A DNA stretch of 64,000 nucleotides, taken from NCBI GenBank assembly GCA_964247055.1, contig OZ176052.1:2356001-2420000 (forward strand). Reading direction: 5' to 3'. The stretch's first letter is position 1, and the number at the start of each line of letters is the position of its first letter. The DNA is from Paragordius varius (taxonomy: Eukaryota > Animalia > Nematomorpha). The notes beneath the pieces are model-generated. The model saw nothing but the letters and a program-made list of their open reading frames with translations, was not told the DNA's origin and did no database searches. Both the position numbers and the translations under genes were made by a program. Below, piece after piece: positions 33,901 through 62,419 of the stretch.

Positions 33901-36900
33901 AATTAAAAAAAATTTGTTTAAAAGGTTTCATAGTAACATTTTTCATCTCCTTTGGAAATTCAAAGAGAAAACAACGCCTTTTTACAACTCTTATCTTTAA
34001 CTGTCCCTGATTGCCATGATTCTATATACACCATAATAATTTTCAACGTTTTATTTTGATATGATGTGTTAGGCATTTATGAAAATCCCGTCTTTAATAT
34101 ACCATTTACGAATTAAATTCACCCTCAAACAATTCAAATACACCCTAAATATAAATGTGTTTGGCTAATATACTCATCATTAATATTAAATATTTCTTTA
34201 TGGCATTGTTAATTATTTTTTCACTATTATTTTAAGTTTAAACTAAATTTTTAAAATATAAAAAAATGGATTTACAATATTTAAAAAAAACATAATTTAT
34301 TTAAGGGTGAATTTGAATGGTTCAGGGGTGAATTCGACGTGTAAATGTATTTCATAATCACAGTATTGATTACAGTGTCATATTTAAATATCGACAGCAT
34401 AATTAGCACAACTTTTTCCGATTAATTATTGGAATTTAGCGTTTTTCGGATGATTAATCTACTTAAGTGTCTAGCAAACGCTATTATTTAGTCCAAATAA
34501 TAACTTCAAATCAAAAATTTAAGTTGCCCCACATCATATAATTTATCTCTCATATATATGATCAAATCGCTTTTCTTATATTACAGTATGAGTAAAAATA
34601 TGCTGGAAAGTTATTAATTATTCCTGCCAAATAGCATATGCAGCAAAGACAATTATTATTGGCTAATAATAGAGTAAAAATTGTAAAAAATAATTATAAG
34701 TTAATAATACTGTCCTTTGTTGTATATGCTATTTAGCAAAAATTAATAATAACTTTCTAGCAATGTATACATCTACTCATACTGTATTTGAAATATTAAT
34801 TTTCTATTTGTAGGATCCCGATCAAGCATCCGTAACGATTTGGAGCGGCCATGTTGTCGTCTGCATATTTGCTCAAAAAGATTCACCTCTCATTGGACTT
34901 CGCAATCTAATCATGCCCCTAAGAGCAAGTTGTTACCATTATCACGAACTTAAACACGTCATTTTGCTCGGTAACGTTGAATACTTGAGGAGAGAATGGA
35001 AGAATATTCATAATTTACCAAAAATATCTATCTATGATGTAAGTCATTTTTTATCAAAGTGTATATAATAGCCATAGGCTCTTAGGTTATCAATATAGTC
35101 TACTAGACCTTAAAAACAATTATAAATTTGATTATAGTTTTAAAAAGGGTTATATTTTTAATCGTTCACAATTAGAATCTATATCATTGATATTTTTTCT
35201 CATTGTTTGTGGTTTTATATCTATATAAACCTCTAAGGTTATAAATCATATTTTCAATAAAAAAGTAAAATTTTTCCAAGCAAGCGCAGTATTTTTCAAG
35301 CATGTTGCGTTTGCTTGGAAAAATTTTGTCTTTGCTTGTAAAAATGCCATTATTAAAAAAGTGTTGCTTTTGACTGAAGAATGATATATTATAATCAGTA
35401 AATTTCTAAAAGATAATATATAACTTTCCATATAAAGTTGTAATATCTATTTAACAAAAATTTGAATAAAATTTTTTTCCCCAACGATATAATGTTTTGA
35501 CTTCTCCATTTTTTGCGACACATGACAAAGGGTTCTCCCCTCATCCGTTCAGACCTTCGTGCCGTGAGTGTCAATCTGTGTGACATGTGCGTAATTTTAT
35601 CAGCTAAAGTCGCTCAAATCGAAGATACCACATTGGGAGATAAGGAAGCCATACTTGCAACGCTAAATATAAAAGCCATGAATTTTGATGAAGCCTTTGC
35701 CACTGTCCAAGAAGAAACTGGTATGTATAATTATAATTCTCTGAAATTATTTTATTTAAGAGTTGATTTATCATTAGAGTTGTGCTGACCAAGTCATGAC
35801 CCGGTCAATTGACCGAGTCATGACCAGGTCAGTGATTATTTATTTTTTGACCATGGTCATTAAAAATACAGCTGTTTTTTGAAAAATTGGTAGTAAATTT
35901 TTGGAAAAGAGATAGTAAGATTTTATTGTTTTTTATATTTCTTAAAAAATTTTAATATTTAAATATGCTTATTTAACAATATATTGAAAACTCTTAAACA
36001 TGCATCCTTATAACATTAGCACCCAAGCATATACAGTTTTTCCAAAAAACAAAACAATCGAGCACTTTGCAAAATAAGCAATTATTCTATATATGTAAAC
36101 CACTAAAATGAATAATTTTTAATTGGATATTTCAATGATGAAAGAATGTGTAAAACAAACTAGGTAATTTTTTTTTGAAATATCCAGTAGTAAAAGCTAA
36201 GTATTTGAAGATGAAGGTCACAAACATGTGGCAAAAATTTAATTGAAAACAAAAGTCGTGATTAAATTTGATTAAAAATATTTGTAAATAATAAATATAA
36301 AAAAATGTATAATACAAACTTTTAAGAAAAATGACATTATTAGTAAAACGAAAGTGTCGTTCAAACCTTATTTTCACAATCCAATATCGCATAAGTAAAA
36401 AGTGCTGGGTCTAGCCGGACTTTTTTGAAAAAGCAGTCAAATGCACAACCCTATTTATCATGCTCAAAATATTATATAGAAAGAATTTATTATTTTCTTC
36501 GAAATATACGAAATAATTTACAGTTTAGGGTTGGGTTAATAATCGAAAAATGGTGCATTTTGTATGAAAGCTAACAGAAATCACATTTTTTTTATAAACA
36601 TAAATATAAATACCCTCCCTAAAAAGATATACTATGCTTGTTATATAGTTGCGACCATAAAGGTCCTTAGTTTTATCTGAACAAATTTTAGCTAACAATG
36701 GTTTGCTAATGTAATATTTTCAATATGAAATGCGTTTTAGGTGTGGCTCTAGTCAATATCCCTGCATCTATGTCACATCATGATAGAGGTTATCACCGCA
36801 AAGGAACCTCCATTCCAATGATAACAGAACTGAGTATATTTATATAAGGATAATAATAAATAATCTCTTCCTTATAATTTATATCATATTTAATTTTTTC

Positions 36901-39900
36901 AAAGTTTTTAAAATTGACAAAAAATGTTTTAGGTTAAAGTTATTGGTTTTTAAATATGTTAATAAATTAATTTATCCGGCTTTAAATGACTGAGATGCTT
37001 CACCATTTACACTTCAAATTCACCCTTGAACAATTTAAATTTACCCTAAAATAAATTATGTGTTTTCAACGATTAAAAATTACTTATATTTTTTTATATA
37101 AAAAAATGAAATTTTGTTTAAAATTAAAATAAGGAAAAATTAATAAACCATGCCATAAAGATTTATTTCATATTAAAAAATGATTTATATAAGCCCGAAA
37201 ACACATGATTATTCTAGGGTGAATATGATTTGTTTAAGGGTGAATTTGAATTGTAAGAGGGGGAATTCAAATTGTTCGAGGGTGATTTAAATTGTACAGG
37301 GGTGAATCTGAATCGTTCAAGGGTTTTAAAATTTCTATGAAAAAGGTATATTAAAATACTTTATATGTGTTCAAATATCACAAAGTTAAATTTACACGCA
37401 AATCATATAACGTATGTAATTTTAACTCTATATTATATTTTATGTTCTCATTGTTTTCTTAACCAGTGAATGACTCAAATGTTCAATTTTTGGACCAAGA
37501 TGATGACGATGATCCAGATACGGAATTATATTTAACTCAACCGTTCGCTTGTGGCACAGCTTTTGCCGTTAGCGTTTTAGATTCTATTATGAGCACAGTA
37601 AGATATTTTAATTTCACTATTTTTTTCTTTTGGTTCAAAAAAACGAGGTTTACTTGCTTTTAATGATTTTTTTTCTCCATTTAATTATTGTTGATTTTTT
37701 TAATTTATATACCAAATAATGTGCAAAATTAATTTATCCATTGCCCGAAATGTGATTTTATTAAAAGTGTGTCATAAGATGTGTGTATGTGTTATGTTTA
37801 TTTCTACAGTCGAGGTCGACTTTTTGCAATATAAAACTTCTCCATAGGTTGGAATTTTTAGTTTTAGTGTAGATTTCTGCCATGGTTGCGTTTGTTCCTT
37901 TTAAAATATTGTCCATCCACCTTATCCTTCTCCCACCCCTTTTACGTGTAGCACTCTCTTTTCCCAATATCAAAGATTTTTCAAGTTAATTAGATCAGAT
38001 AATGTGGCCAAAGTAGGATAGTTTAGTGCGGTTGGACATTCCAAGCACTGACATATGGTGTTGGTTATTTAAAATTGCGTTGTTAGTTATTTTCCCTGTT
38101 TTAAATGTCTGCAAAGACCTTTTGTTGCAAAATATAGCGCATTCACAAAAATATTTTATTTTCTTGTATTATTTTATATATTTTAAAAGATGCAATGTGA
38201 TAATTATTTTTTGGGGGCCAATTTTTTTTTCCTACGAATTAACAAAAAACAAATTAAACAATAATGTTTTTATATTAACTTTTTTCCCATGATTTAGACA
38301 TACTTTAATGCAAATGCCCTAACCCTAATTCGTACACTTATAACTGGGGGCGCTACACCAGAGTTAGAATTAACTCTGGCAGAAGGCTCAGGGCTCCGAG
38401 GCGGATATTCAACCCAAAAAATCTTGAAAAATCGTGATAGATGCCGTATCGCTCAATTACCACTCTGGGAGGGTCCACTTTCTTCATTTGGGGTTTGATT
38501 TTACAAATATGAATTTTAGCTTTTTTTTTTATCTTTTAGTAAGTTAGAATTGCATTAAATAATTTATTTAATAATATTTTTTTTTATGAAATAAAAGTAT
38601 TTAATTGTAGTTTGGCTGTAAAAGGGTCAAACTATATATCAATCTTAAAATGCAAAATAAAAAATACCCTGAATTCTTCATATGGGGTTTGATTTTACAA
38701 ATATGAATTTTAGCTTTTTTTATCTTTAAGTAGGTTAAGAAAAATATTTTATTTAATATAATAATTTTTTGATAAAATAAAAGCTTTAAACTGTAGTTTG
38801 GCTGTAAAGGGTCTAATTATATACCAATCTTAAAATACCAAATAAAAAAATACCGGGAGGCATTGTTTCGTAGTTTTTTCAGAGTTAAAGACCAATTTTA
38901 TAAGCGTTATGTGATCACATGTATTAACAACTAATAAATTTAATTTTAAAATCAAACTATAATTTAATGCAAGATGTTACCGGGTACTTTTATTACCTTA
39001 ATAAGCATTTATTGCTTTTGCTCGACGGTTTTTTATTATCTAAGAAAAAAATAATAATGAACAAAATTTTTATTTATCAAAATGTATAGGAGGGCTCCTT
39101 GTACAGTGATCTTTTTTGTGCGGCTATGCGAAAATATTCAATGCTCTGTTTAGGCATTTATCGTATCAAAGATGCCAATTCACTCATTAAAAATATTTGT
39201 TCGTCGGCAAAACGTTACGTTATCACAAATCCCGAGGACGATTTTTTGCTTCTTAAAACGGATCAAGTTTTTGACGATTAAAATTTTATTTTAACCATTT
39301 TTTTGCAAAAAAGCTGATAAATTTAATTATGCCTTTAATATAAACCAGGGGTGTCCCAAATTCACGCTGCCTTCAAAAAAAATTACAGCCCCCCAAAAAT
39401 AGATAAAAAGAATACAAATAAATACAATCGATTAAATTTCAAAAATTATCTCAATAAAATTATGAAAGTTACATCATTTACTCGAAATATTATTTTTTGA
39501 TAATATTTAGATATTATACATTTCATTTACCATTAATGTTCGATAAAGATTTATGGCCATTTAATAATTATAGAGGAAAAATTGAAATTATACGGACAAA
39601 ACGTAAAAATATAAAAATAAATATTTTTATTGAAAAAACAATCATCATACTTTTTAAATTTTGAATTTTTTAAATAAAACTCATTGTCTGAAATTGCTCA
39701 GTATGGAATAAAGATATAAATTGCAATATATTATGTATTTTACGTGTATTTAATTGATTGATAGGGAATAAATTAAGGTTTAAATAAGCTTGGTTGTCTT
39801 TTACAAAACAATTTATTATCTTATATTTCATTTTGTCCGTATAATTTCAATTTTTACTGCATATGCCATATATTACTTTCATATATGAATTTGGCAAAGT

Positions 39901-40595: not shown

Positions 40596-41706
40596 TACAA
40601 TAAAAATCTTTTAAAGAATATTTTATCCATAGAGGCAGAATAGCTACTAAAGTAAATGCAATATACCAGTGATTTATCGTAGAGTGCAATATTGTATTTA
40701 ATATATATGAATATATTTAATAAATTTTATTAACTTACATTATTTGAAAAATCTTTTTTAATATAAATATGAAAAATAATAATTTTATATAACAGTTTAT
40801 TGATTTTAAATAGGGTTTAAGGATAAGTATTATTTCAAAAAATGCCATTTGTTAATTTAAATCTTACTAAATTCACAAATAATAATAGGTTGTGGATACA
40901 ATAGGTAAATGATAAAAATTTATTCATTCATGCTATGTACATAACAACATTTATGAGTTTTCTTGTGCCATAAAAATGTGTCAATGAAAATTTTGTATCT
41001 AATAATTTCATTTATAGATATTAAAATAATCAATATATATATATATATATATGGATGTTGCTTTTAAAAATCAATCAATAAAAAACACAATAATATATTT
41101 GATTGCTAAGATTCTATATATCATTATGAATGCGTCAATGTTTAAAAAGTGCTAATTAAAAATTACGAAATACTTAGGCATAAATAATTATGTACATTGA
41201 TTGATATTATGGGGGAAAAGTGTGAATATAAATAAGTGACTAGTTAATTTAAGAAAAAGATCTATGGTCAAATCTAAAACAAATTTTATTACACTTTCAT
41301 TTTCCAAACCGGATAAATAAGGCGACTTAAAGTTGCGCCAATTTTGGACAGCTCCTCGAATGAAATTTTGTGACAGGGGTAAACTTTGTTGAGTTCAATT
41401 ATAGCATCATTCTATAGAATCCAAAAATTTATGTTTTATATATCGGATAAAAAAGTTTTTTTAAACCTTATATTTGAATTATAATCTCCAAAAATGTTGA
41501 GAACGTAAGTTTTAGTAAAATGGTTTGCCTTCCAAGTTCATCGCTTGAAATTTGATTTTTTTAAAATAAACTAACAGACATCTTGTGAGTATGATTTAAT
41601 AAGATTGGTATATTTAAAAAATAAGTTATCCAATTTAAATTCTATTTTATTGCGGTTATGATTCTTTGTAATTGAGTGCTTATGATTTCCATTCCATTTT
41701 TTAAGT

Positions 41707-42653
41707 TTAGATAAAGGGGATTAAAGCCCACAAAAATAGAACATAGCGTTTAAATATTAGCATAAAAATAATTATAATAATGATAAAAAAACAAAAAATT
41801 GAATTAAAATTTGAAAAATAACAATAATTTTTTTTAAAAATCAGCTTTTCAAGCTTCAATAACGGTTGGCTAAACGGTTTGATTTCGGTCATATAATTTA
41901 GGATAAAGAAAGAAAATCTTAATTAACTAAATTTAAAATATACTCTAAAAATTTTATCATCATAATAAAATATGTGGCCTTTAAATGAGATTATATTCCG
42001 TGTATCAAATGGAACACCCAATTTGCGATACTTGAATGAGCTCTGAGTTTCAATTTGCTAAAATTAAATTTAAATCAAACTTTTAACAAATAGGTATGAT
42101 TTTTTAAGTTCGTGTTATAAATTAATAATTGTAGTTCAGGTAAAAAATTTAAACATTCCTTTAAATTATCAAGATTCGGAGACATTTTTACCAAAGAACA
42201 AGAAAAATCAAATAGTTGGGCAATGTTTTGGGCTTCTGATAGGCAATAATTGCCTTTATAACCAATAAACAATTCGCTACCTAGATATAAAATAATAAAT
42301 TTACCGGAAAATAAAATGTTATCTGATACAAATAAATCAAAACTGTGAAGATGTAGATTTAAATCTTTACTTAAGATCGATTGAAAATACTGCATTTTAT
42401 ATAATGTATTAACTTTATCAGCCAAAGAGGATAAAATACATATGTTGTCAATAGTGAACCCATAATCTCCAGTGAGGGATAAACATATATTATCATTTTC
42501 TGGTGCCAATTCGATTATATCCAAATCAAATTTTCTTAATATAGCAATGTATTCGTTAAACTCTGAGTGTAATTGATTGTTAATATCGATAGATGATTCC
42601 AAAATAATGTTTTTAGGGAACCTTCTAACCACGGCGTTACAAAACCGATACAT
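41707..42653 (-). CDS. DDAH-like (dimethylarginine dimethylaminohydrolase family) protein, strongly divergent; last exon uncertain
   Basis: Exons 42653-42305, 42280-42081, 42057-41944, then an uncertain terminal exon within 41917-41707. Matches to DDAH1: NAVVRRFP~HAVVRALP; YIAILRKFDLDIIELA~YVGVLGSKLGLQVVELP; LFSG/SELFIG~LFTG/REFFVG; KYRKLGVPFD~RYDKLTVPDD; KGHIF~KGHVL; LEKL~LEKV. Confidence 0.75.
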
Positions 42654-43122
42654 CGACCCATCGTTTACTCACAATCATAAAACCAGCCTTAATATAAAAT
42701 ATTTTAATATTCACATGCAAAGATTTTATCAAAATGAGTCGTTATGCAAAAATAATAACAATTTTCAAGTAAAATTTTTCAGCAATTTAAGTGATACCTA
42801 AAATAATATAAAAATCATATAAATGAGATTAAGAACAAACATTATGCAAAAACAACTTTCATGTAGGTATTCCCTTCAACATGTGCAAACTGATTTTTTC
42901 GCTTAAAAAACGTTTCTCTATCACGCAGATATTGTTAATTTTTGCCTTTAATCAAATTATTTTAACTTCTCTCGCTGTTCAAAACCTTATCTCTAATTCC
43001 TATAATTTATGATTGCATTTTTATTTAATCATAAACCAAGATCTTTCCATCCCTAAGGTAGGGTTTTATTATTAATATAGCCTTGTATTTTTAATAATTA
43101 CTTTCATTTTCATCAGATATCA

Positions 43123-45425
43123 ATGCCTAAACTCAGCGGTTACGCAAATAGAAAACGAATCCAGGAAGAGAATAAACAAATAAAATGCGAATTACTATGA
43201 AATCTTATTTAAGGATAATATTTGATAATATTATAAAAAGTGTATGCGACACAAACATAACGGTGCCCCTTAATAAAAAAAAATTAAATAGACCTGAAAC
43301 ACCTATTATTGATCAATAAATAGAAATGAGAAAACTAAAAATATACTATTTGTAATTCCAGCGCTATACCTAGAGAATGTCACCTATTTAAAATTAACTA
43401 ATAATAATGTTCCCGTAATATCAATCAACTTCGCACAGAAATGATTATTCGTGGATCTCAATGAAATGAAAATAAATGCAATCTCTTTGAAACAAAAAAT
43501 CATCGTTCAATGCTCCAATCTTGGTTTTTTCGACGTGTCGGTAAAAAATAATCATGTGAAGTTGAGAGGTCTTGATATTCACCAAAGAACAGATATGCGT
43601 ATTGTTTTTGTTGCCTGCTTTTTGATCGATCTAATTCTTCATCATTTATTATAACTTCGCATGGTTTCAATAAATGGAGCAAAAAAGATAAAAAAAAATC
43701 CATCATAAAATAGCCTCAATCACCGGAAAGCATTTACTGCTTGAAGAGGCAGAAAGAAGATTGATAAATAAAACAGGAATTGATTCTGCTCTAGAAGCTC
43801 ACATACAATCGGAAAAGAATCGATGGCGAAATATTTTACATTGAATATTGGCCCGCATAAAATTTCTAATCACCCAATATCTCCATTTTCGAGGACATGT
43901 TGAACATTTAATGTATCTAGATGACTCAGCACCAAATCCTGGAACCTCTTATCTTTACTAAAACTTGCAGCTCAGTTTCACCCAATAATGGGAGAACACA
44001 TGAATGACATTGACTCTCCTAACACATTCTATGTTTCACCCAAAATCAAAAACAAGTTTATACATCTTTTATTTTCAAGAGTTAAAGCTAAATTGATCGA
44101 TGACATAAAAAGTAAATATTATAGACTTATATATGATTCAACGCCAGATATAGCCCACCGAGAACAAATTTCTCAATTTATCAGTTATGTGTTCATTGAT
44201 TATTTGAAAGAGAAAGTTGTGATAAAAGAACTTTTTTAATTTTTTTCAGTTAAACAAAGATGCAATGTCAATTGAAAAGGTAATTTTAGAAAATCTAAAT
44301 ATGGATAATAAGTTATCAAATTGTAGATCTAATGCTATGATAATGCAGATGTGATGTCGTCACATTTCAAGCATTTAACAAAGGATACCTGAAAAAAAGA
44401 GCAATATTTGTCAACTGTGACAATGATTCCTTGAATTTAGTAGGAGTCACGGTAACAATTTCGGAATAATTGAAAATATCTTTCTTTTTTTCACCTTCAG
44501 TATTAGATGAGACCTATTAATAAATAAACAAAAAAAACTGTTAAGCATGAGTCGAAACCCGATGGAGTGCTGGAATTCAAGCAGTTAATGCCATTGTTGA
44601 GGGAATAGATTATTTAATGTTTAGAAGATTTTAGTAAAAATACTTCAAATACTAGTGAAACAAGAAGTGAGGCATAAGTTTAGCTTCAGAGTGTTTTAAA
44701 TTTTAATTTTTTAACATTTTTTTTGTCTGGCATTAAATATACCATTTGCACTTCAAGAGTGTCCTTGAACACTTCAAGTTGGTCCTTGAACAGTTCAAGT
44801 TGGTCCTTGAACATTTCAAGTTGGTCCTTAAACAATTCAAGTTGGTCCTTAAAAATTATAAATTTTGATTTAACCATAATTTTTGTTATTTTTCTATTAA
44901 ACCACTTTTTTGTTTCAAACTATTTTAAATGAACAAAATTATTGACTTTTAAATGTTTTTAATGAAAAATTATAATTAATAACCCAGAAAACTTATATAT
45001 TTTTTCCTTTCGTGTTAAATGAATATTCAAAATTATTTTAAGAAATTAATATATACGGTTTTTCAAAGATTAAAAGTTGATATCGATTTAAAATTTATGT
45101 TAAATAATAGAAAATAGTTTAAAAACAATAATATAGATGATCTATTAACGATTTGATTGATAAAAGTTAAAAACAAAACAAAAAAGTCAAAGGAGAAACT
45201 TGAAGTGTTCAAGGACCAACTTGAAGTGTTTAAGGACACTAAGTGCAATTGGTATACATAGAAGAATCGATAGGGTTTAACATAGATTGCAAGATCCTAA
45301 AAATAATTTTAATGAAGCATTTAAAGACATTTAATCCTTAACTATTGAATTATCAAATATTCGGAAAGGATTGGGGGCATCAGAGTTTTATGCCCCGGGC
45401 GCCGCAAATGCTCGGTACGCCACTG
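43123..45425 (+). mobile_element. Decayed hAT-superfamily DNA transposon (DUF4371/ZMYM1-like transposase remnant) with right TIR
   Basis: Broken ORF fragments: MPKLSGYANRKR (43123), GIDSALEAHIQSEKNRWRNIL, HFRGH, LAAQFHPIMGEH..YVSPKIKN..YDSTPDIAHREQISQFISYV; many stops and frameshifts. Right end ...GGTACGCCACTG (reverse complement CAGTGGCGTACC) ends at 45425. Left TIR not found. Confidence 0.75.
44740..45254. mobile_element. MITE family A variant with 21-bp tandem subterminal repeats, nested in the hAT remnant
   Basis: TACCATTTGCACTTCAAG ... AAGTGCAATTGGTA; about five units of CASTTCAAGTTGGTCCTTGAA at about 44749-44850, with inverted units near 45190-45240. Confidence 0.7.
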
Positions 45426-46679
45426 ACGGTATAAAACAATTTAAGATACGTAAAAACACTCTTTCTATATAATAAATGATGATAAACTTTTCTATCACTT
45501 AAGAATTTTGATTTTGTTCGCCTTTAAATTTATGATAAATCTAAATTGAATTTAAATTATGTTTGGCGCTGAACACAAGTTTTAAGTTTCTGAAAAATGC
45601 TTTCTAAAATTAAAATATGGAAAATTCTAATAGTTTTAAATGGTAATTATTTAAAATATTCGCTTTCTCCTACCATGTGCCGCTGGCAGCAAATCGAAAC
45701 AATATTTAAAAATGTAATAATCGGGTATATTTGATTGTTTTAAAATGAATAAAAAATAAAGAACCTGTTTCCTAACAAATATAAAACACATATGAAGGTG
45801 CGCTAACATATATGATATATCGTATAATACATCGGGATAATCTATTTTTACATTAAATTTTTCTTTTTGAGATAAGATAGACACAACTAGGTATATTACG
45901 ATATTTGTAAATTTCATTTGACGCTTTCATAATTATCGATTGGCTCTAATCTTTTGCACAAAAAATTTTTTTATTATTTGTATTTCTAGACGTTGGGCGG
46001 AAATTTGGTCCACAACGTGATTCTATAGCCGCCTAAGAGATTTTATGACCCGTAAAATATAAAGCAAATTAACACAATAATTTCTTTCCAAATAATTACA
46101 TTTTATTAATTATATTTTTTAAGGCTCATCAATTTTTTAAAACTAAACAAACGGTAAACACAACTATATTACCGATTGTGGTTAAAACTCGTCCAATTCA
46201 AACTACAGTTTGTATCACACTTTTCAGATTTCCCTATTTTAAAGCATTTATGATTGAATATTAAAAATCAGATAAGTTTGCTACGCTTATATTTTTCATT
46301 CTTCAGGGAATTGTATGGAGCGAAGGTAGTGTAAGGTGGCGCTTTCAGAATAATCAATAGTTGATGTTAACAGCTGTATATAAGAATGAATTTTATATTT
46401 TAATTTAAATCTTGTTCTAAATAACTATGAATATTTAAGTATAAAGAAATTTTGTTATTCCAACAATCATATGATTATTGAGTTATGCCCTAGGCTCCTC
46501 TATAAAATTGTGGATAATAAAAGGGTCTAGTGTAATTACAAATATATCTTTGTTCACCAATTATTTATTGGGTAATTAATATGTGTAGGCTGAAAGATAT
46601 AAGGAAGCAGTGCCAAAAGGTTAGAAAAGTCCTAAATATACATAATGTGAATCATCGAAATTCGCTCAATTAAGTAAAA

Positions 46680-47540
46680 TATATAAAAGTTGTTGTCTTT
46701 CTGCGGTTTTCGATTAGCCGCAACATTGAAAATATATCTTCTCCACTTAATGCGTATACCAGATCTAGCGTTTAGTTCGGCTAATGTTTGGTTTGTTTCT
46801 TGGAATATGTTATCCATCCAGCGAGTTCTTCTTCGTCCTCTTTTACGAGCACCAATCACTTTTCCAAGCAGTAAGAGAGTTTTTGGCGTATTAGGCTGCC
46901 AAGTAGGGATATTTCGTATTAATTTTGTTCAAAATAGTAGAGTTGGCCATTTTATTTGACCATTTCGTTTAGAGAAGTTTCTTCCATACTCATAGTTCAA
47001 AAAAATTAATTAATTAGTCATATTTTATCAATGTCCAGCTTTCACATCTATATAGTATAGGGGTTACTAATGCCTTGATCAATCTAATTTTGGTTTTTAA
47101 TTCGATATCATGCGACGAACAAATCTGTTTGAAAGTAAATAATTTTGCGTAATTTATGAGGTAAAGTTGTTCTTATTACAGATGAAATAAGTGTAGTACG
47201 GTTTCAATCGGATTTCCGTTGATGATTATTGAGTTAATTGTTTGAGCTGGATTGATTTGTAATACTTTTGTTATTTAAAGTTAATTTTTCCGTATTTGCC
47301 ATTGATTGTAAAAAATTGGAGAATTTGCGATAAAATGCCGATACTGTTCGCAAAAATTCTGTTATCTGCATAATAAACGGAGGCAAGCATCCGACGTTAA
47401 TCAGAAGTTTCTGGCAGATTTATTAGTACGCATATGGGCGTTAAAAGAATTCGTGCAAAATCGTAGCCATGACGCAGGCCGACTTGCACCTCACATGAAT
47501 CAGTTATACCGTGAGCTGCAGTTACTATAGCAGTGGATTT
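46680..47540 (-). mobile_element. RTE-type LINE 3' fragment (older, degenerate)
   Basis: GARKRGRRRTRWMDNI motif; similar to 60055-60960, including a decayed GxxQGCxLSP region. Confidence 0.75.
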
Positions 47541-47739
47541 TAAGCATAATGTGAAGATTACGTTGATTATATAGAGTTATTTTAGGGATATTTGTACTTT
47601 ATTGTGTTAGATGGATTCAAATGCTTTGGAAAAGTCAACAAAGCACATGTGCAGTTCTTTATTGAATTCTATATGTTTCTCTAGTATCCACCACACATTG
47701 CATATCATATCTCGGCATCCTCCTCCTTTTCAAAAACCA

Positions 47740-47890
47740 GTTTGTTATGGTATAGTAGGTAGGGCGCCGGACTCTTACACTCCGTGCAAGAGTTCGACCC
47801 CGAAACCACGCAATTTTTCCATCATCACTGTCAGCCCTGGGCAGGCGAGTGTTTAAAGGCCTCCACATGTCCGAATACAATTTAAGTCCT
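47740..47890 (+). ncRNA. tRNA-Lys(CTT)-like Pol III unit: tRNA pseudogene or tRNA-derived SINE head
   Basis: A-box-like TGGTATAGTAGG (47748-47759), anticodon-arm-like GGACTCTTAC, B-box AGTTCGACCCC (47791-47801), T5 run at 47814-47818. The acceptor stem pairs poorly, so it is probably not a functional tRNA. Confidence 0.5.
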
Positions 47891-48751
47891 CACCCTTTAA
47901 TAAAAAGGAAAAAAAGAGATTCTAATAAACTGTATATTATTTTAATTTTATTTATCGTGGATATCTCCGCATCAAGAAAGGTATTTAGTCAAACCTGTAT
48001 TATTTTTAGGAAATCTTTCGATACCTGGTTAATGAGATAAGGGTAGGGTAATTATACCGTACCTTTTCCTCTCGATTAATAAACATGTTTTTACATGAAC
48101 GAAAGGGGTGCTACATAAAAAAAGTACCCATAGTAAAAATATCTAATCTATGTCTGTAAATTGTATTATAGGTATATTTTAATAATATATGGTTATTTTG
48201 GCTAACTTTTTTAGTAATTATAATTTATAGTTAATAACATTCTTGTATATGTTACAATACCTTATGAATATAACTAAATTATATTTACAATAAAATGATT
48301 GCTATATCTGTATTAATTATATTCTATAGAATGGATGGATTACAATGTAAATATATTATATATTTTTATACAGTATAAATAAGTATATATTGCTGGAAAG
48401 TTATTAATTATTACCAAATAGCATATACAAGAAAAGGCAGTATTATTAGCTTTCATTTCTTTTTCACTTTTTATTATTAGCCAATAATAATTCTCTTTGT
48501 TGCATATGCTATTTGGCAATAATTAGTAACTTTTCTAACAATATATACTTACTCGTATTCTATATATATAATTGGGACATGTTAAATTTGAGCAATATTA
48601 AATGGTTAAACAATGTTTTAAAATAGTTTAAGCTTGCATAGTTAGAATAAAATATGTCATAATAAGGGAAGGGTAAGACAAAGCTAATAAAGGCTGACTA
48701 GTGCATAATTTATCACAAAATAATAAGTAATACATGAAATAATTGTTAGTA

Positions 48752-51700
48752 TCATTCAACCGGTTTATACAGTAATGTGGTGACATATTTTTTATTGTGT
48801 CTGTGGGTACAACTCAAAACCATAACATTGTCCTGTACAATGATGTTAATAAATATTAAAAAAACATATAAGCATAAATTTGTATTTTCAGAAAAATATA
48901 TTTAATTATTTGGTTTGTATTGGACCAAATTTTTAATAAGTCAGTCCTGGTATCAAAATACTTTTTAAGTACACCAATGAAAAAGTATTATATAATTATA
49001 TTATGGCTGAAAAGGTTAATATATAAAAGATTTATAAAAAAATATTTTATTTTTTTAAAAAAATACATATAGCAAACCATAATTCCAATCCGTTATAAAA
49101 ACTGAATTCCGTATAAAAAAAACGTCGTAAAAATGTGTTATACAACAAAAAACATTCGTTAGCTAAAAATATGATTAATCTAAATCTTTCCTTACCCTTT
49201 GCTCAAAATAAAAGAACCGTTAAAAATTTGATTAAAAATTTCCAAATTAATGAGGAAAAAACCTTGAAACAACAACTTTCTCAAAGTTTAAGTTAAGTGC
49301 ATAAAAAATAATTACCTTAATACTCAAGGCATATAAATGGTTGACCATAACGTGATTTGGTTCAGGCAAGAGTTCAGGTTCGAAATGGTAGGGGATATTT
49401 TGATTAAGTATGACTTGAAGTAATTGAGGAGGTAAGATGGGTGGCCCACTTGGACCGCTATTGCGTGACCTTTCCCCACAAGATCTAGAATGATGTTCCG
49501 TGTGAGAACAACTACTGTTATCATGAGATGAGCCAAATAACCGATCCCAATCAACGAGTAGCCGTGTACTTGGAATATCTTGACTATAACCTATAGCCAT
49601 ACATACATACAGACATTTCGTAATGTGTAAACTTTTGTAAAACGTTATGTGTATACGAAAATAATCGGAAATCATTTTTTTTCGGAAAAATTGATTATAA
49701 CATATATATAAGGATATAAAAATTTATCTTAATGAGTATTTATACGGATTTAATTTTTGGAAAAATAAAATTATATATGGATATTGAAAATTTATATTAA
49801 TGAGTATTTAAACGGATTTAATTTTTGGAAAATCATGACAAAAAACCTTTAAGTATAGTACATAAATGAAAATTTATTTGATCCAAATGAGTATTTATAC
49901 GGATAAAATTTAAGGTAATGATATATCTTGACTATAACAAAGGTATATAATTTTATACATCGGTGTATCTCCGTAATGAGTAAGGTTGTGCATTATGACT
50001 GTGACGGTTTAAGAAAATAACTGGTCAAAAACGTTTTAAGATGTGTAATTAAAAAAATGTTTATCAAATTTAATAGATTGTCATTATTAATGAAGATATT
50101 GAAACGAATCAACAATTAACCTTAATTCGTTTAAATTATTTTATTTTACATTTGTGGTATTGATGACGCATATGTCCGCAAAAGACTCCATTTAAATATT
50201 AATTCCACTGCTTACAATACTATAAATTATATTTTATACATGTGACTTGAAACATTTGACAACAAAGTGTGATTAAATATATTGCATCCCTGAAATTAGT
50301 TTTTTATAATTTGGAGGGCCGTTAACTATGTTTAAAATATCACCCCTTCATGGTTTATACAATCCGTTTTGATAACCACCTATTTTAGGTTTAGATTTAT
50401 AAAAAGGTGGTTGTAAAATGTGCACATTTAATTACCCTTATCATCCAAATAATTTAAATGCGAATGTGGAGAAACGAATTGATTTGAACCGGAGGACGAG
50501 TCTGATGAACGACCAGATGAATCGTGACCAGCTGATGTGGAAGCTAAATCGTCTGCCAGAGCATCGAAAACTTCAAAATCCGATTTTTTTACTTCTATCA
50601 CATTATTTTTGCTCCCAAACGCATTCTCTATCACTGGCTAAATAAAGTAAATTTATATTGCTATTTATTTATTTATATTGCCATGCCAAATTGCATATAC
50701 AGAGCAAAGAGCATCATTATTGTCAGTAAAAAGCGAAAAAAATAACTATATAGACCAATAATATTGCCCTTTGCTTTATATACTTGCTATATGGCATTAA
50801 TTTATAAAAAAACTACAATGTAAACTTACTCATACTGTATAATATATACATACGAGTAAAAATTAATATTTTTTGTAAAATGTATGGCTACTCAAAACTG
50901 ATTTAATACAATAAAATATGGAGTAATGAAATTATTTAAATATTATTATCAATGATTAAGCACATTTCAAACTAGCATATAAGCATTTCTCTTAAAATTT
51001 GAAACTGAAAAATACAAAACTAAAAATTTATTTTGAAATAAGTAAAGATTAAGGTTAGGTAAAATAGTATTTAGTCTTTTTTGATAGAAAAGTACCATTC
51101 TTTCATCATAAGCCCAATTATCATCAACTAAAAATTTGTATTCGTGCTTCCCTTCCGGAATTTCGACTATGGTTGCAAATTGTTCATCACTATAAAACGC
51201 AAAAAATATTTGATAATTATAAAGTATCAAATATAATAAATTTGCACAAAATATAGATTGTCAGTTTATAATAGCTTATTTGAATCGGTTAGCATCGGTT
51301 AAATAATTTTGAAATTAACAATTATATATTTTTATATTAAAAAAATTCCAAATACACCAATTAAAAATTATGGTCGTTAAAAATAGGCTAAATAAAATAA
51401 TAATTTGGGTATACATAATTATAAAATGTATTGTTATATTAAAAATATATTGGAATATATACCATTTACAATTCAAATTCACCCTTGAACAATTCAAATT
51501 TACCTCAAACAATTCATATTCCCCCTAAAAATCGGGATAATAGAACTCATCATTAATATGAAATATATTTTTACGACATAGTTTAATATTATTTCAGCAT
51601 TATATTAATTTTAAACAATTTCATATTTTAAAAATATTATAAAATAAAGTAAATTTTTAATCTTAAAAAACACATAATTTATTTTTAGGGTGTTATTAAA

Positions 51701-54700
51701 TTTAAAGGTGAATTTAAATTGTTTAAGAGTAATGTTCAAGGGTGAATTTGAATTGTTTAAGGGTGAATTTGAATAAATGGTTTATATATATATATATATA
51801 AATATACCATTTATGCAAATATATATATATATATAGCGTTGCATAAAATCTAAATAGAATTTCAAATTTCTGATAGATCGAAACTTTATTGACTGATTTT
51901 AAAATATTGCAGTGGAGTTAAAAAAATTAATTAGCTAATATTGTTTATTATTATTAATGATTTTTAATTCAATCGATTAAATAATCCTTTAATTCAACAA
52001 CATTTACAATATAACCAATTTTATTATATATGGAATAATTTAGCAAAAAAATAAATTTAATTTTTTTTATTATGGGGGGGGGGGGGGGGGGGGGGGTGAT
52101 ATAAAATTCCAATGTTTAAATTTTATAAATAATAAGCGGTGCTTTAACAAAGTATCACTTAAAATTGGTCAAAACGATGTTTGATTGGAATGGGAAATTT
52201 TTTGAATAAAATAAGGATAAAAAACTGGTACATATAAAAAAATTAAAATTTCCGACAGTTTCTATTAATTTAAGTATCTTTAACCATCCTCTAGCAATCA
52301 TATTAAATGGCACATATCAAAACTAACCTTAATAGAAAAAAATTATCCATTATTATTAAATTTTAACAAGGCTTTCCTGTTTTCCATATTATAGCTTTAC
52401 ATAATACGATATTTAAGGACTTAATAAAACGATCTATCCTAAAAAAAATTATAAACCTATAATAACACTTCCGAAAATTGATATTAAACTTATATTAATG
52501 ACACCTTATTTTTATTGAATGGACAATCCATATTACAGTAAAAACTGGAATATATAGACAAAACGTAAAAATATAAAGACAAATATTTTTTTCTAAAAGA
52601 CTTATTGTGTTAAACTGCAAAATATAAAATAGAAATTTAATTGATAAGACAATCAATTACACATTTTACGATTGTTATATAATGATTTTTATAGAATAAA
52701 TTAGGGTTTGAAGAAGTATGGTTGTCTTTTGAAAAAAAATTTGTCTTTATATTTTTTACGTTACCGTAAAATTTCAATTTTTAGTGTATTTAAAATATAT
52801 TTTGAAACTATAATTTTGGGCTTAAATATCTTATGAAAAATGCTATTAAGGCAATAATTTTAATATAAAATGCTTTGAAAAATGGGTAATTATTTTAATT
52901 TAAACTAAATTTTGATATTTTTACAATGCAAAGAGTGATGCCATCATAGCAATTATTTATTAGTAATAACTTTTGATAAAGTATCGTTAATCCATTTTAA
53001 AACCGAATTTTGTGGAACTTTCTTGAAGACGGTAGTATATGGCACAAAATAACAAAACGAATAAATTAAATTTTCCCCTATATTTTAACAAAAATAAGAT
53101 TTTTTAATATGGACAAACTGTCTTTAACACCATACGTTACTGTTAACTAAATTTTATTATACAGGATTGTTGCTTAGTTTTTACAGACCTAATCGCAACG
53201 ATCCATAATTAACAATTATTTATCATACATATATTTTTACAGCAAATATACAAGTTTTTTTATAAAACTTTCATTGTATGACACTAGGAGAAACAATGTA
53301 AATTGAAATATTTTTGTAAAGTATTCCTGTTTTCTACAATCAACCAATAAATTTAGGATTCATGCCAAAAAAAGTTATATTTATATTAATTTGCTTGTTT
53401 TATTAGGTGTTTTTTTACCATGTAGTTAAGAAATAAAACATGAATACAACAAATATTTGTAATAAAATTGGTATAGGTAAACATACGAAACCTGTAAAAA
53501 TTGAATTAAATATTAGGTATATTTGATACTGCTAAAAATATATTTACATAGCTAGGATATGTCACCTAAGTAGAAAATAGGAGCGATTCATTCAAAATTC
53601 ATATTTTTTATATAATTTGTGTTAAATATGAATACATGTAAAATTGAACCTAAAGTGCCGTGAAATACAATATATAAAAAAATTATATTCTAAGATGCTA
53701 TTTTTAGGCTTTTAATCACGTACTCACAAAAGATAAAATATTAGTGCACGCAAAATATGTTTAGTCATTATAATATATTATGAAAATATAAAACCACCGC
53801 CTTCTTTCTTATCTCTAATATTTTTGATACAATAATACAAAATATATTGCCTAAACATAAAACGCTTTTATAAGTAAAATGTAACTGTTAAAATGCAAAA
53901 ATCAATACTTTGGGCAAATTCAATGTAATTAAAATAAAAAGCTTGCAATTTTTTAAGATTTTTCTTAAAATTTATAATAAATATAATATTTTCATAAATT
54001 AGAATGAATTTAATTTTAAAAAACTGCATAAATAGAAAATGCGTTTACGCAAAAAAACCAGGATGTGGACAAAAATTTAAAAATAGATAAGAAAATGATG
54101 TATAACTATAATTGTCAGTCAGACGATAGCAAAAGTTAAATTATGAATAACTTGTAATATACCTTAAAACCATAGGTATTCGTGATTTCCAGCCATCCCA
54201 GCTCCCCAACAACCAAACTTTGGGTTTATTTCCTCCGCTATATCCACTACTGTTTGTATGATGATGCATTCGATCTCGTAAAGATTTAAACCGAATTTGT
54301 GGAAATATAAAGTGACGTGCTGCACCGTGGTCTTTAGGTGATTTAGAATCTGAACTGGTTGAATTATGTCGACTACGGGCATTATTTGGACCGGTTATAA
54401 CAGTGGAAGAGCTATTTTGGCTAGTGTCGTCAGAATTGGTACTTTGATTAGATTGTTCATTATCCAGGTTGGAGGTGAGTGGAGGTGTAGAAAACTCTTC
54501 ACGGATATCAAATTCTACCCGCTTATGAGGTTCTTTGGCACTAGATATGCCACTATCAATACTAATATTAATAGATGGTTGGCCGGTTAAATACGTAGGT
54601 GTTAATTGTCCAGAGTTTTTTGGATCCCATCTAAACACAGTGGGCAAGTAGTTGCGACCCGATTTACTAATTTTTTTAAAGTTCGGGAAGTAATCAAAAT

Positions 54701-55061
54701 AATTTTTATCACTATGAACACCATGACCAGAATAATAGTTTATTTTATCATCAACTGGAGATTTTAAACTTTCTCCTGGTGGAGTGCTATCATGACGCAT
54801 TCGCCAAAATGCCAATGATGGATAAGCTTGGCTAATAGTTTTGGCCCGGGGTCTAACAAACTTAGGTGATTGCGTGTTAGGATTCACACCTAGGTGCTAA
54901 AAATAAAAAAACGCAAAATATACCTTTACATATATATCTGGCGCTTCTTTATCTATTTTACTTTGCCTAACATTGACATCAAAAAAAGTTCCACTTCTAA
55001 AATCAGAAGATATCTCGTCAAAATCGGGAGTTGCATGCCGCTTTGAATGATGCGCTCCCAT
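48752..55061 (-). CDS. PRKAB: 5'-AMP-activated protein kinase beta subunit (about 490-510 aa depending on the exon-1 donor)
   Basis: Exons 55061-54924 (donor ambiguous), 54896-54163, 51189-51096, 50637-50436, 49590-49316, 48832-48752. N-myristoylation-type start MGAHHSK; CBM48 PTVFRW..VWLLGSWDGW..IPMVLS..EGKHEYKFLVDDNW..NNVIEVKKSDFEVFDALADD; C-terminal PPILPPQLLQVILN..LPEPNHVMVNHLYALSIKDNVMVLSCTHRHNKKYVTTLLYKPVE*. Confidence 0.93.
52074..52096 (+). repeat. G23 homopolymer (a G17 tract lies at 22296-22312)
   Basis: Seen directly. Confidence 0.9.
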
Positions 55062-56309
55062 CTGGTGAGCGATTTAAATATGAATATATGAATATTAAAT
55101 ACAAATGTCAATTTTCGATTTATCGTATGATTAAATCCAATTTATGGATGAAAAAATTAACATAACTCGGGTTGATACTTCTTCAACCCATTTTTCTAAA
55201 AATATAAACGCTGTACGCCCAAAAAACTCTGATCAAATTATATATTTTGATAGTAAATGTATCATTTTCATGGAGTTTTGGTATGCGGTTAATGTGAAAA
55301 AGTATTTTTGCGTAATTTGTCACCATGAAAAGTGTCAAATTAGGGCTTATTTTAACAATTAAAATTTTTGGTAAATACAAAAAATTAAATTAAATTATAT
55401 ATTCTGACAATCCAGGTGATATATATATATATAGATATTTATATATATGTATATATATATATTGGATATTTAGCAATCAAGATGATTTTGGTTTTTGGGC
55501 TTACGAGTGATATAGAAATGTACAATTGCGCATTTTATGCAATTTTGTTTGTAGAATCTAAATGCGGCATAAAAAAAATATCAAAATTTATTATTAACAC
55601 TTCATGACCTTTTAACTTTTTCGCCCTAATTGATATGTTGATTTATATTCCAGAGCTCAATTTTGAATATTTTATTTAAATTTAATCATCAAACTTTCTC
55701 CTTTGTTAAATAAAAAGCTTAATTTTTACAGTTCTGTGACTTCTAGATTCTAAAATTGGTAACAAACAGCTGATATTATAACAAAATCAGGTTTTTGCTT
55801 CTGAACTGTAGCCTGAAATCTTTTTGAAGTTATTCATCTTTTCTAACCATACCTACATTTATTTGCCTGTCAAATTAGAGATTTAAAAAGATTTAAGGAA
55901 ATGCGGCATGAGTCGGGGATTTTTTTTTGATTTTTACAATTTTTTAAAAAATAATTGCGCCTAATAGGCTAAACGAGCATATTTTTAAATTCGTGTTAAT
56001 ACCTTAATTATTTTTTAAGATAATCCAATTTCAACTCGATTAGGGATATTAAATTAACCCAAACATTCATAGAGTTTATACATGTAAGTTAAATTATCAA
56101 AAATCAGGTATTTTTACATACCTGAAAGTCTCAAATTTATGCTCTCTAAAATGGAATTCTCTTAAACTCAAAAAATGCAGAAATTGCGCGATAAAATTCT
56201 AAATGTATGCTAAATTTTAATTTACACTAAAAATATTTAAAATAATACATTTTTGATATTGTTGAAGTGCGCCTAATACCATTTTGGAAAATGTATATAA
56301 TCTCCTTAA

Positions 56310-61600: not shown

Positions 61601-62295
61601 TGTTGTTGTTGCTAAGATCGATTCCGACTAACTGCAACATTGAAATTATAACTTCTCCATTCATTGCGAATACATGATCTGGCGTTTAGTTCGGATAATG
61701 TTTGGTTAATTACTTTGAGGATGTTACCCATCCAACGAGTTCTCCTTCTTCCTCTTTTACGAGCTCCACTCACTTTTCCCAGCATCAGTGACTTTTCAAG
61801 TAGGTTAAATCTCATAATGTGGCCAAAATAGTTTTTGGCGTTAGGCCACCCAGTAGCGACATTTTCGGATTAATTTTATTTACAATAATGGAGCTAGGAA
61901 TCTTGTCTGACCATTTTGTTTGGAGAAGTTTCCTCCACCATAGTTTGTAAGAATTTATTAGTCATTCGGCATATTTTTTCAGCGTCCAGCTTTCGCCCCC
62001 ATATTGTAATGTGGGGAATACTATTGCCTTGATTAATCTGATTTTGGTTTTTAGTTGGATGATGTGGCATCCAAATCCTGTTGTATATGAATGTAAATGC
62101 TTTTGCAAGGGCAATTCTTCGTTTTATTTCTGATGTAGAGTTGTTGTCATTGTTCGTAATACTGCTCCAAATACGTGTAACTGTTTACGATTTCAATCTG
62201 ATTTCCGTTGTGGATTATTGAGTTAGTTAATTAAGCTACATGTATTACCTTTGTTTTATTAAGTGAATTTTAATCCGAATTTATTGCATTCAGAT
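61601..62295 (-). mobile_element. RTE-type LINE 3' fragment, inverted close relative of 60285-60980
   Basis: Its reverse complement aligns almost base for base with 60285-60980; tail CTTAGCAACAACAAC. Confidence 0.85.
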
Positions 62296-62419
62296 GTTTT
62301 TTTTACCAAAAATATTGATTTTATACCTTCTCCGAACATTAGACATAATTATATTATATTCCTTACATACCCTTAACATATTTCTCATTAAATTCTCCCA
62401 TTCTAAGCACATTCTGTTT

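What the first reader, a model, noticed from the sequence alone, without database searches (positions are those of the whole stretch)
41918..54923. Two-class intron system: 23-27-nt micro-introns coexist with 75-nt to 3-kb introns
Seen: three GT-AG introns of 23, 24 and 27 nt (plus a 26-nt candidate) in two conserved genes, while slo, nicastrin and the ZP gene have introns of 75 nt to about 3 kb, and AMPK-beta itself has a 2973-nt intron 2. Known: introns under 30 nt are typical of ciliates, nucleomorphs and dicyemids, usually genome-wide; most animals have a floor well above this. Inference: this spliceosome handles intron-defined micro-introns with almost no room for a separate branch point and pyrimidine tract, alongside long introns, which is unusual in an animal.
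Basis: partly seen in the sequence, partly recalled or inferred. Interest (0 to 1): 0.9.

Follow-up and report, generated by a model that had tools for sequence, protein, structure and literature searches.

The report
Tiny introns in hairworm genes
Two ordinary genes of this AT-rich, hairworm-like genome carry segments of 23, 24 and 27 bases that look like real introns, because a related hairworm has introns at the same spots; introns this short are published for only two other animal groups, but I could not see the cutting in RNA.

Summary
The 23-, 24- and 27-nt GT-AG segments exist exactly as described.

- **Relative:** the only close relative in the databases is the hairworm Gordionus.
- **23 nt and 24 nt:** the Gordionus DDAH1-like gene has introns of 39 and 42 nt at the same codon and phase.
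- **27 nt:** the Gordionus AMPK-beta gene has a 7,790-nt phase-0 intron at about the same place, with a near-identical donor (AAG|GTATATTT).
- **Gene models:** removing the three segments gives a 261-aa DDAH-like protein and a 507-aa AMPK-beta. Both align end to end with the Gordionus proteins.
- **26-nt candidate:** wrong. The same donor pairs with an acceptor 532 nt away and restores a conserved last exon.
- **Long introns:** AMPK-beta also has introns of 2973, 458, 845 and 483 nt, so both size classes sit in one gene.
- **Chance:** sequence alone does not prove the case. GT..AG scans give no excess over control dinucleotides, and one in-frame 24-mer is clearly coding.

Introns under 30 bp are published only for dicyemids and myxobolid myxozoans. 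The scan has already noted the same micro-intron class on several other pieces of this genome.

The parts
54897..54923 (-). 27-nt GT-AG micro-intron 1 of AMPK-beta; phase 0, in frame, ends in a TAG stop, GC 0.19
   Evidence: Exon 1 (MGAHHSKR...GTFFD) and exon 2 (PKFVRPRAKTISQAYPSLAFWR) are one continuous protein in Gordionus P0006. Gordionus has a 7790-nt phase-0 intron at about the same place with donor AAG|GTATATTT.
54924..55061 (-). AMPK-beta exon 1 (46 aa, starts MGAHHSKR)
   Evidence: tblastn with Gordionus P0001; model.
54163..54896 (-). AMPK-beta exon 2, including a long insertion inside the carbohydrate-binding module
51190..54162 (-). AMPK-beta intron 2, 2973 nt, GT-AG
   Evidence: Gordionus has 2858 nt at the same position.
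48755..51189 (-). AMPK-beta exons 3-6 (51189-51096, 50637-50436, 49590-49316, 48832 to about 48755) with introns of 458, 845 and 483 nt
42281..42304 (-). 24-nt GT-AG micro-intron of the DDAH-like gene; phase 1 inside a Gly codon, in frame, no stop, GC 0.12
   Evidence: Gordionus has a 42-nt intron at the same Gly codon and phase. Removal gives a gapless ILFSGSELFIGY against VLFTGREFFIGI and a better global score, 298 against 284.
42058..42080 (-). 23-nt GT-AG micro-intron of the DDAH-like gene; phase 0 between Lys and Gln, contains an in-frame TGA, GC 0.13
   Evidence: Gordionus has a 39-nt phase-0 intron between the same K|Q (ILK|QMEMKASYKYK against LLK|QIETQSSFKYRK). Retention truncates the protein (score 137 against 298).
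41412..41943 (-). 532-nt GT-AG intron 3 of the DDAH-like gene; it replaces the proposed 26-nt candidate at 41918-41943
   Evidence: The last exon at 41411-41292 (..FEELSKIGATLSRLIYPVWKMKV) matches the Gordionus C-terminus. Gordionus has a 620-nt phase-0 intron here.
41292..42653 (-). DDAH-like gene, 261 aa in four exons (42653-42305, 42280-42081, 42057-41944, 41411-41292)
   Evidence: The ESM Atlas features also point to DDAH_eukar.
42390..42413 (-). Negative control: an in-frame, stop-free GT..AG 24-mer (GTTAATACATTATATAAAATGCAG) that is coding, not an intron
   Evidence: Removing it lowers the alignment score (285 against 298). It also leaves 10 residues between anchors where Gordionus has 16 and P0004 has 15.

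Best explanation
The 23-, 24- and 27-nt segments are genuine U2-type GT-AG spliceosomal introns of a nematomorph (hairworm) genome. They are extreme members of a short-intron class that is about 40 nt long in the related Gordionus. They sit in the same genes as ordinary introns of 0.5-3 kb. Shown: GT/AG ends; AT-richness relative to the exons; exact coincidence with orthologous intron positions and phases; and restoration of full-length proteins that align end to end with the orthologues. Inferred: removal from pre-mRNA by intron definition, with a branch-point A about 8 nt upstream of the AG. That leaves only 15-19 nt between the 5' splice site and the branch point and a 3-5-nt pyrimidine stretch. 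Splice-site motifs look the same in short and long introns (GTAWWT...YAG), so one spliceosome probably serves both classes.
For: The sequences and frames are as described. The nearest relatives of both genes are Gordionus sp. m RMFG-2023 proteins. The annotated Gordionus DDAH1-like model has introns of 42, 42, 39 and 620 nt in phases 0, 1, 0 and 0. The window's 24-, 23- and 532-nt introns fall on the last three of these at the same codon and phase. The spliced DDAH-like model scores 298 against P0003. Retaining the 24 nt gives 284, the 26-nt model gives 241 and retaining the 23 nt gives 137. AMPK-beta exons 1 and 2 are contiguous in Gordionus P0006, and the window's 27-nt segment carries an in-frame TAG. 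Gordionus intron 1 is phase 0 with a near-identical donor. The full 507-aa model has only GT-AG introns, of 27, 2973, 458, 845 and 483 nt. Intron GC is 0.12-0.19 against 0.27-0.39 in the flanking exons. An A lies at position -8 from the 3' end in all three (read).
Against: There is no RNA evidence for these sites. Sequence-only scans show no excess of such segments over control dinucleotides in this window. The 24-nt segment is in frame without a stop and could be retained. The AMPK-beta intron-1 position is equivalent only within the alignment uncertainty of a poorly conserved region. The A at -8 is weak evidence in DNA that is about 74% A+T.
Confidence: 0.8

Rival explanations
1. The 24-nt segment (42281-42304) is not removed, or only sometimes. 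It would be an exonised or optionally retained intron that adds eight residues (KFIILYLG) to the DDAH-like protein.
For: It is 3n long, in frame and stop-free. The orthologous 42-nt Gordionus intron is also 3n and stop-free in frame. An unrelated in-frame GT..AG 24-mer 100 nt upstream is clearly coding.
Against: It lies exactly on the Gordionus intron position and phase. Its GC is 0.12 against about 0.28 in the flanking exons. Its removal gives a gapless match across the conserved LF(S/T)G-(S/R)E(L/F)FIG block and a higher score.
Confidence: 0.12
2. AMPK-beta intron 1 is not 27 nt. It would use the GTAAAG donor six bases upstream (33 nt, 54897-54929) or the in-frame CCTAAG acceptor 36 bases downstream (63 nt). 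With the second option it would be an ordinary small intron.
For: Both alternatives keep the frame (one search lists the 33-nt form; the 63-nt form is read). The residues directly after the junction are poorly conserved.
Against: The 36 nt after the 27-mer have a GC of about 0.44, which is exon-like. They encode NPNTQSPKF, which resembles Gordionus NPPSPHF. The AAG|GTATATTT donor is shared with Gordionus.
Confidence: 0.1
3. The segments are not introns at all. They would be chance GT..AG strings in decaying pseudogenes, or small insertions or assembly artefacts.
For: GT..AG segments of this size that bridge open frames are no commoner than controls in this window. The DDAH-like gene is very divergent and lacks the catalytic Cys.
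Against: Both genes are otherwise intact over 261 and 507 codons with GT-AG at every intron. Two segments coincide exactly with orthologous intron sites, at about 0.02 probability per site. The loss of the catalytic Cys is shared with Gordionus, so it is not recent decay.
Confidence: 0.05
4. The segments are removed by something other than the spliceosome, such as programmed DNA excision in somatic cells.
For: None from the tools. It is considered only because tiny intervening sequences in ciliates include DNA-level excised elements (own knowledge).
Against: They have canonical GT...AG ends and share splice motifs with the long introns of the same genes. Their positions are homologous to annotated spliceosomal introns in Gordionus.
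Confidence: 0.02

Closest known systems
Dicyemid micro-introns (Dicyema sp., D. japonicum)
   Same: GT-AG spliceosomal introns mostly under 30 bp (median 27 bp, about two thirds under 30 bp; PMC6543705) in a parasitic animal. They keep conserved intron positions, and the genome has many repeats (49%; PMC6736024).
   Different: In dicyemids the short class dominates a reduced 67-Mb genome (mean intron 38 bp). Here the micro-introns are a minority beside 0.5-3-kb introns in the same genes. The lineage is ecdysozoan, not spiralian.
Myxobolid myxozoan ultra-short introns (Henneguya, Thelohanellus, Myxobolus; PMC13644364)
   Same: Median 22-27 bp. They were validated by conserved positions between conserved exons. 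Weakly conserved A residues lie a few bases upstream of the AG, with no real pyrimidine tract. The hosts are parasites with AT-rich genomes.
   Different: Myxobolid short introns are the genome-wide norm and tend to have short neighbouring introns. Here a 27-nt intron is followed by a 2973-nt one. That paper found ultra-short introns in only two animal lineages among 51 genomes. I could not check whether any nematomorph was among the 51.
The roughly 40-nt short-intron class of the hairworm Gordionus sp. m RMFG-2023
   Same: Orthologous genes with the same intron positions and phases. The introns are AT-rich GT-AG and sit alongside introns of 0.6-10.8 kb.
   Different: Gordionus short introns are 39-42 nt in the gene examined. 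The window's are 23-24 nt, and one Gordionus 7.8-kb intron corresponds to 27 nt here.
Ciliate tiny introns (Paramecium about 20-30 nt; Stentor 15-16 nt)
   Same: Canonical GT-AG introns far below the usual steric minimum. 3n introns tend to carry in-frame stops (own knowledge; the 27-mer here ends in TAG).
   Different: They occur in unicellular eukaryotes, where tiny introns are essentially the only class.
Bimodal intron lengths of tapeworms and flukes (a short mode near 36 nt plus long introns; own knowledge, not checked here)
   Same: Two discrete intron size classes in one parasitic-worm genome.
   Different: The short mode there stays above 30 nt.

Membership tests
U2-type GT-AG spliceosomal intron | GT at the 5' end and AG at the 3' end on the coding strand | tested here: met
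   All three segments, and all five longer introns of the two genes, are GT-AG.
U2-type GT-AG spliceosomal intron | Removal restores a continuous reading frame that encodes the conserved protein | tested here: met
   The result is a 261-aa DDAH-like protein and a 507-aa AMPK-beta that align end to end with the Gordionus proteins. Retaining the 23- or 27-mer meets a stop.
U2-type GT-AG spliceosomal intron | Position and phase shared with an intron in an orthologue | tested here: met
   The match is exact for the 23- and 24-nt introns (K|Q phase 0; Gly codon phase 1). For the 27-nt intron the phase is the same and the position is approximately the same.
U2-type GT-AG spliceosomal intron | Absent from mature mRNA | not testable with these tools
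No transcript-derived protein of this species was found.
U2-type GT-AG spliceosomal intron | Branch-point adenosine upstream of the 3' splice site | tested here: inconclusive
   An A is present at -8 in all three (TTAAT, TTATA, TTTAT contexts). This is expected fairly often by chance at about 74% A+T.
Animal ultra-short intron class (dicyemid or myxobolid type) | Intron length under 30 nt | tested here: met
   23, 24 and 27 nt.
Animal ultra-short intron class (dicyemid or myxobolid type) | Short introns are the majority, so the genome-wide median is below about 30 nt | tested here: not met
   In the two genes, 3 of 8 introns are micro-introns. slo shows none, and its smallest verified intron is 94 nt. 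Only one window was examined.
Animal ultra-short intron class (dicyemid or myxobolid type) | Reduced splice-site motifs (GTa...AG only) | tested here: inconclusive
   Three introns read GTTTGA, GTAAAT and GTATAT at the 5' end, and all end in TAG. That is too few for a sequence logo.

The most novel reading that the evidence does not exclude
This hairworm lineage would be a third, independent animal lineage, and the first ecdysozoan one, with spliceosomal introns under 30 nt. Here they would form a discrete class biased towards the 5' end of genes, and coexist with kilobase introns in a repeat-rich genome. The class would have arisen by collapse of both roughly 40-nt and multi-kilobase ancestral introns. 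Its spliceosome would tolerate only 15-19 nt between the 5' splice site and the branch point. Gene finders with higher minimum intron lengths would break such genes, which could inflate the reported loss of universal genes in Nematomorpha.
Probability: 0.4. Interest if true: 0.8.

Novelty: new member of a known kind. Interest (0 to 1): 0.66.

Why it matters
A September 2026 survey (PMC13644364) states that introns under 30 bp occur in only two animal lineages, both with compact, reduced genomes, and predicts that more will be found. A hairworm would add an ecdysozoan case in which micro-introns and kilobase introns share the same genes. That makes the minimal requirements of an otherwise ordinary animal spliceosome directly testable. 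It also has a practical side. From my own knowledge, common aligner and gene-finder defaults (STAR minimum intron 21 nt; AUGUSTUS minimum about 39 nt) would miss or mis-model such introns. They would truncate genes such as AMPK-beta at the in-frame stop and depress completeness scores. Hairworm genomes have BUSCO scores near 70% (10.1101/2023.06.26.546503), which have been read as gene loss.

Tried and rejected
- **RNA evidence.** It was counted and nothing was laid.
- **Runs X1 and X2.** They hold about 0.7 of the words across introns as well, so they are DNA, not RNA.
- **DDAH-like ORF.** It has no Pfam hit, no PDB hit and no word-index hit. Only the exhaustive HMMER search found the Gordionus orthologue.
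- **Own-species proteins.** Searching with Gordionus AMPK-beta found no protein of the window's own species, so there is no transcript-derived model.
- **Sequence-only statistics.** Scans for ORF-joining GT..AG segments showed no excess over control dinucleotide pairs.
- **26-nt candidate (41918-41943).** Rejected in favour of a 532-nt intron.
- **Extra in-frame 24-mer (42390-42413).** It lies near the Gordionus intron-1 site but is rejected as coding.
- **30-nt GT..AG before the slo exon (34784-34813).** Most likely just the 3' end of a long intron, because the preceding slo exon lies at about 33.6 kb.
- **22-nt candidate (3107-3128, minus strand).** The gene could not be identified.
- **Nicastrin.** Not found by Pfam scans of ORFs or by a motif search.
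- **tRNA-like stretch near 47.75 kb.** ARAGORN found no tRNA.
- **Literature.** Searches found no report on intron lengths in Nematomorpha.
Full report
**What is there.**
The window is 22-35% G+C. All features of the finding lie on the minus strand. The three strings are exactly as described:
- 23 nt, GTTTGATTTAAATTTAATTTTAG, at 42058-42080.
- 24 nt, GTAAATTTATTATTTTATATCTAG, at 42281-42304.
- 27 nt, GTATATTTTGCGTTTTTTTATTTTTAG, at 54897-54923.

The 23-mer contains an in-frame TGA and shifts the frame. The 27-mer is in frame and ends in a TAG stop. The 24-mer is in frame without a stop.

**The genes and the organism.**
- Pfam confirms AMPK-beta (AMPKBI and AMPK1_CBM).
- The second gene has no Pfam, PDB or word-index hit. 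ESM Atlas features point to DDAH_eukar/amidinotransferase.
- The exhaustive HMMER search finds one clear relative, P0003 (E 6.8e-14, 35% identity). This is the RefSeq 'dimethylarginine dimethylaminohydrolase 1-like' protein of the hairworm Gordionus sp. m RMFG-2023.
- The best AMPK-beta hits are also Gordionus. They share lineage-specific features with the window: the N-terminus MGAH.SKR, the block RPRAKTISQAYPSLAFWR, and SCTHRHNKKYVTTLLYKPV.
- Gordionus DNA is 26.9% G+C (10.1101/2023.06.26.546503).
- I conclude that the window comes from a nematomorph that is related to Gordionus but clearly distinct from it.

**The DDAH-like gene.**
I rebuilt the annotated Gordionus model exactly from its locus. 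It has introns of 42, 42, 39 and 620 nt in phases 0, 1, 0 and 0. The window matches the last three:

| Window intron | Junction in window | Gordionus intron | Junction in Gordionus |
|---|---|---|---|
| 24 nt | splits a Gly codon after its first base (TCC G\|gt...ag\|GT AGC) | intron 2, 42 nt | ACT G\|gt...ag\|GC AGA |
| 23 nt | phase 0 between Lys and Gln (LLK\|QIETQSSFKYRK) | intron 3, 39 nt | ILK\|QMEMKASYKYK |
| 532 nt | phase 0 | intron 4, 620 nt | phase 0 |

tblastn also found a last exon at 41411-41292 (..FEELSKIGATLSRLIYPVWKMKV) that matches the Gordionus C-terminus. The donor proposed for the '26-nt candidate' therefore pairs with an acceptor at 41412. This gives a 532-nt phase-0 intron homologous to the 620-nt Gordionus intron 4.

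Global alignment scores against P0003:

| Model | Score |
|---|---|
| 24+23+532 spliced (261 aa, end to end) | 298 |
| 24-mer retained | 284 |
| 26-nt model | 241 |
| 23-mer retained | 137 |

The window lacks Gordionus intron 1. An in-frame GT..AG 24-mer nearby (42390-42413) is coding, because removing it worsens both the score and the spacing. This is a useful warning that such strings arise by chance.

**AMPK-beta.**
A homology-guided search over GT/AG sites gives a 507-aa protein in six exons. The introns are 27, 2973, 458, 845 and 483 nt, all GT-AG.
- Exons 1 and 2 are contiguous in the Gordionus protein, so the stop-bearing 27-mer must be removed if the gene is functional.
- The Gordionus introns are 7790, 2858, 10784, 1173, 135 and 1493 nt.
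- Gordionus intron 1 is phase 0 after AAG with donor GTATATTT, as in the window. Its position is equivalent only within the alignment uncertainty of a weakly conserved stretch.
- In-frame alternatives exist: 33 nt with an upstream GTAAAG donor, and 63 nt with a downstream CCTAAG acceptor (read). The 27-nt form is favoured because the following 36 nt are GC-rich and encode NPNTQSPKF, which resembles Gordionus NPPSPHF.

**Is it more than chance?**
Sequence alone does not show it. Scans for short GT..AG segments that join open frames give the same counts as control dinucleotide pairs:
- All segments of 18-34 nt: 49 'obligatory' cases against 42-108 for controls.
- AT-rich obligatory segments: 4 against a mean of 2.3 and a maximum of 5 for matched controls.

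The support is comparative. A 20-30-nt GT..AG segment starts at a given base of these genes with probability about 0.02, yet two fall exactly on orthologous intron sites and a third falls approximately on one. Intron G+C is 0.12-0.19 against 0.27-0.39 in the flanking exons.

**RNA.**
- X1 and X2 hold about 0.7 of the words over introns too, so they are DNA.
- X8 holds 0.27 of the AMPK-beta stretch, about its exon fraction, and is a promising RNA lead.
No read-level evidence exists here.
- No protein of the window's own species is in the protein collections.

**Two classes.**
- In these two genes the introns are 23, 24 and 27 nt against 458-2973 nt, with nothing in between.
- slo is confirmed by Pfam. 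Its smallest verified intron is 94 nt (27272-27365), and its exon spacings run up to about 3 kb.
- The micro-introns are the first intron of AMPK-beta and the first two of the DDAH-like gene.
- Splice motifs are alike in both classes: GTAWWT at the 5' end and (T/C)AG at the 3' end.
- All three micro-introns have an A at -8. This implies a distance of only 15-19 nt from the 5' splice site to the branch point (inference).

**Literature.**
- Introns under 30 bp are reported in animals only for dicyemids (median 27 bp; PMC6543705, PMC6736024) and myxobolid myxozoans (medians 22-27 bp; PMC13644364). The latter paper predicts further lineages.
- I found no report on nematomorph intron lengths.
- The two hairworm genome texts I could search contain no occurrence of the word 'intron'.

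**Earlier scan notes.**
Earlier notes of this scan describe the same class, 22-28 nt, on several other pieces of this genome. I treated them as leads. My Gordionus comparison independently agrees with their remark that a related worm has roughly 40-nt introns at such sites.

**Verdict.**
Three of the four proposed micro-introns are very probably real (confidence 0.8 overall; the 24-mer is somewhat less certain than the other two). The 26-nt candidate is not an intron. The case would be a new animal lineage for a known kind of intron, with the unusual feature of coexisting with kilobase introns. RNA confirmation is still outstanding.

Noticed in passing
window 42390-42413 (-): An in-frame, stop-free GT..AG 24-mer lies close to the site of Gordionus intron 1. 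By alignment length and score it is coding. It shows that micro-intron look-alikes occur by chance in this AT-rich coding DNA.
   Followed up: yes
window 42281-42304 (-); L002 10404-10445: The orthologous introns of both hairworms at the Gly codon (24 nt and 42 nt) are 3n long and stop-free in frame. Retention would add 8 or 14 residues without breaking the protein, so optional retention is possible.
   Followed up: partly
window 54219-54626 (-): The AMPK-beta carbohydrate-binding module is interrupted between FRW and GSWDGW by about 136 residues of Ser/Asn-rich sequence. Gordionus has about 25 residues there. The stretch is open and GC-rich (0.39), so it looks coding rather than intronic.
   Followed up: partly
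window 41292-41411 (-); P0003 C-terminus: At the column where another DDAH homologue (P0004) has the Cys of the ..SLCLL.. motif, the window has Ile and Gordionus has Val (..LSRLI.. and ..LSRLV..). The presumed catalytic Cys seems to be lost in both hairworms.
   Followed up: partly
window 49100-55099 (run X8): A 2024 run filed under another organism label holds 0.27 of the sampled words of the AMPK-beta stretch, about its exon fraction. It holds none of the DDAH-like stretch. It may be RNA containing this species' transcripts.
   Followed up: no
window 43925-44236 (+), 46635-46928 (-), 37764-37985 (-), 61615-61869 (-), 62267-62791 (+): There are transposon remains between and inside the genes. 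One is a hAT-type DUF4371 fragment. Several are LINE-like tails that share the motif RKRGRRRTRWM. One is an endonuclease/exonuclease/phosphatase ORF.
   Followed up: partly
window 44690-44880 and 45190-45250; also 630-860, 1286-1773, 2458-2625, 51318-51530: A short repeat family reads as LEQFKFTL or FKDQLE in translation. It recurs in direct and inverted copies, including inside AMPK-beta intron 2, and looks like a MITE or small satellite.
   Followed up: no
window 52074-52096: A run of 23 G lies inside the 2973-nt AMPK-beta intron.
   Followed up: no
window 3107-3128 (-): A 22-nt AT-rich GT..AG segment (GTAAAAAAATTTTTTTTATGAG) joins open frames of 33 and 81 codons. The gene could not be identified, so its status is unknown.
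   Followed up: partly
L003 3160-10949: Gordionus AMPK-beta intron 1 is 7790 nt where the window has 27 nt. If the two are orthologous, an intron changed size class between two hairworm genera.
   Followed up: partly
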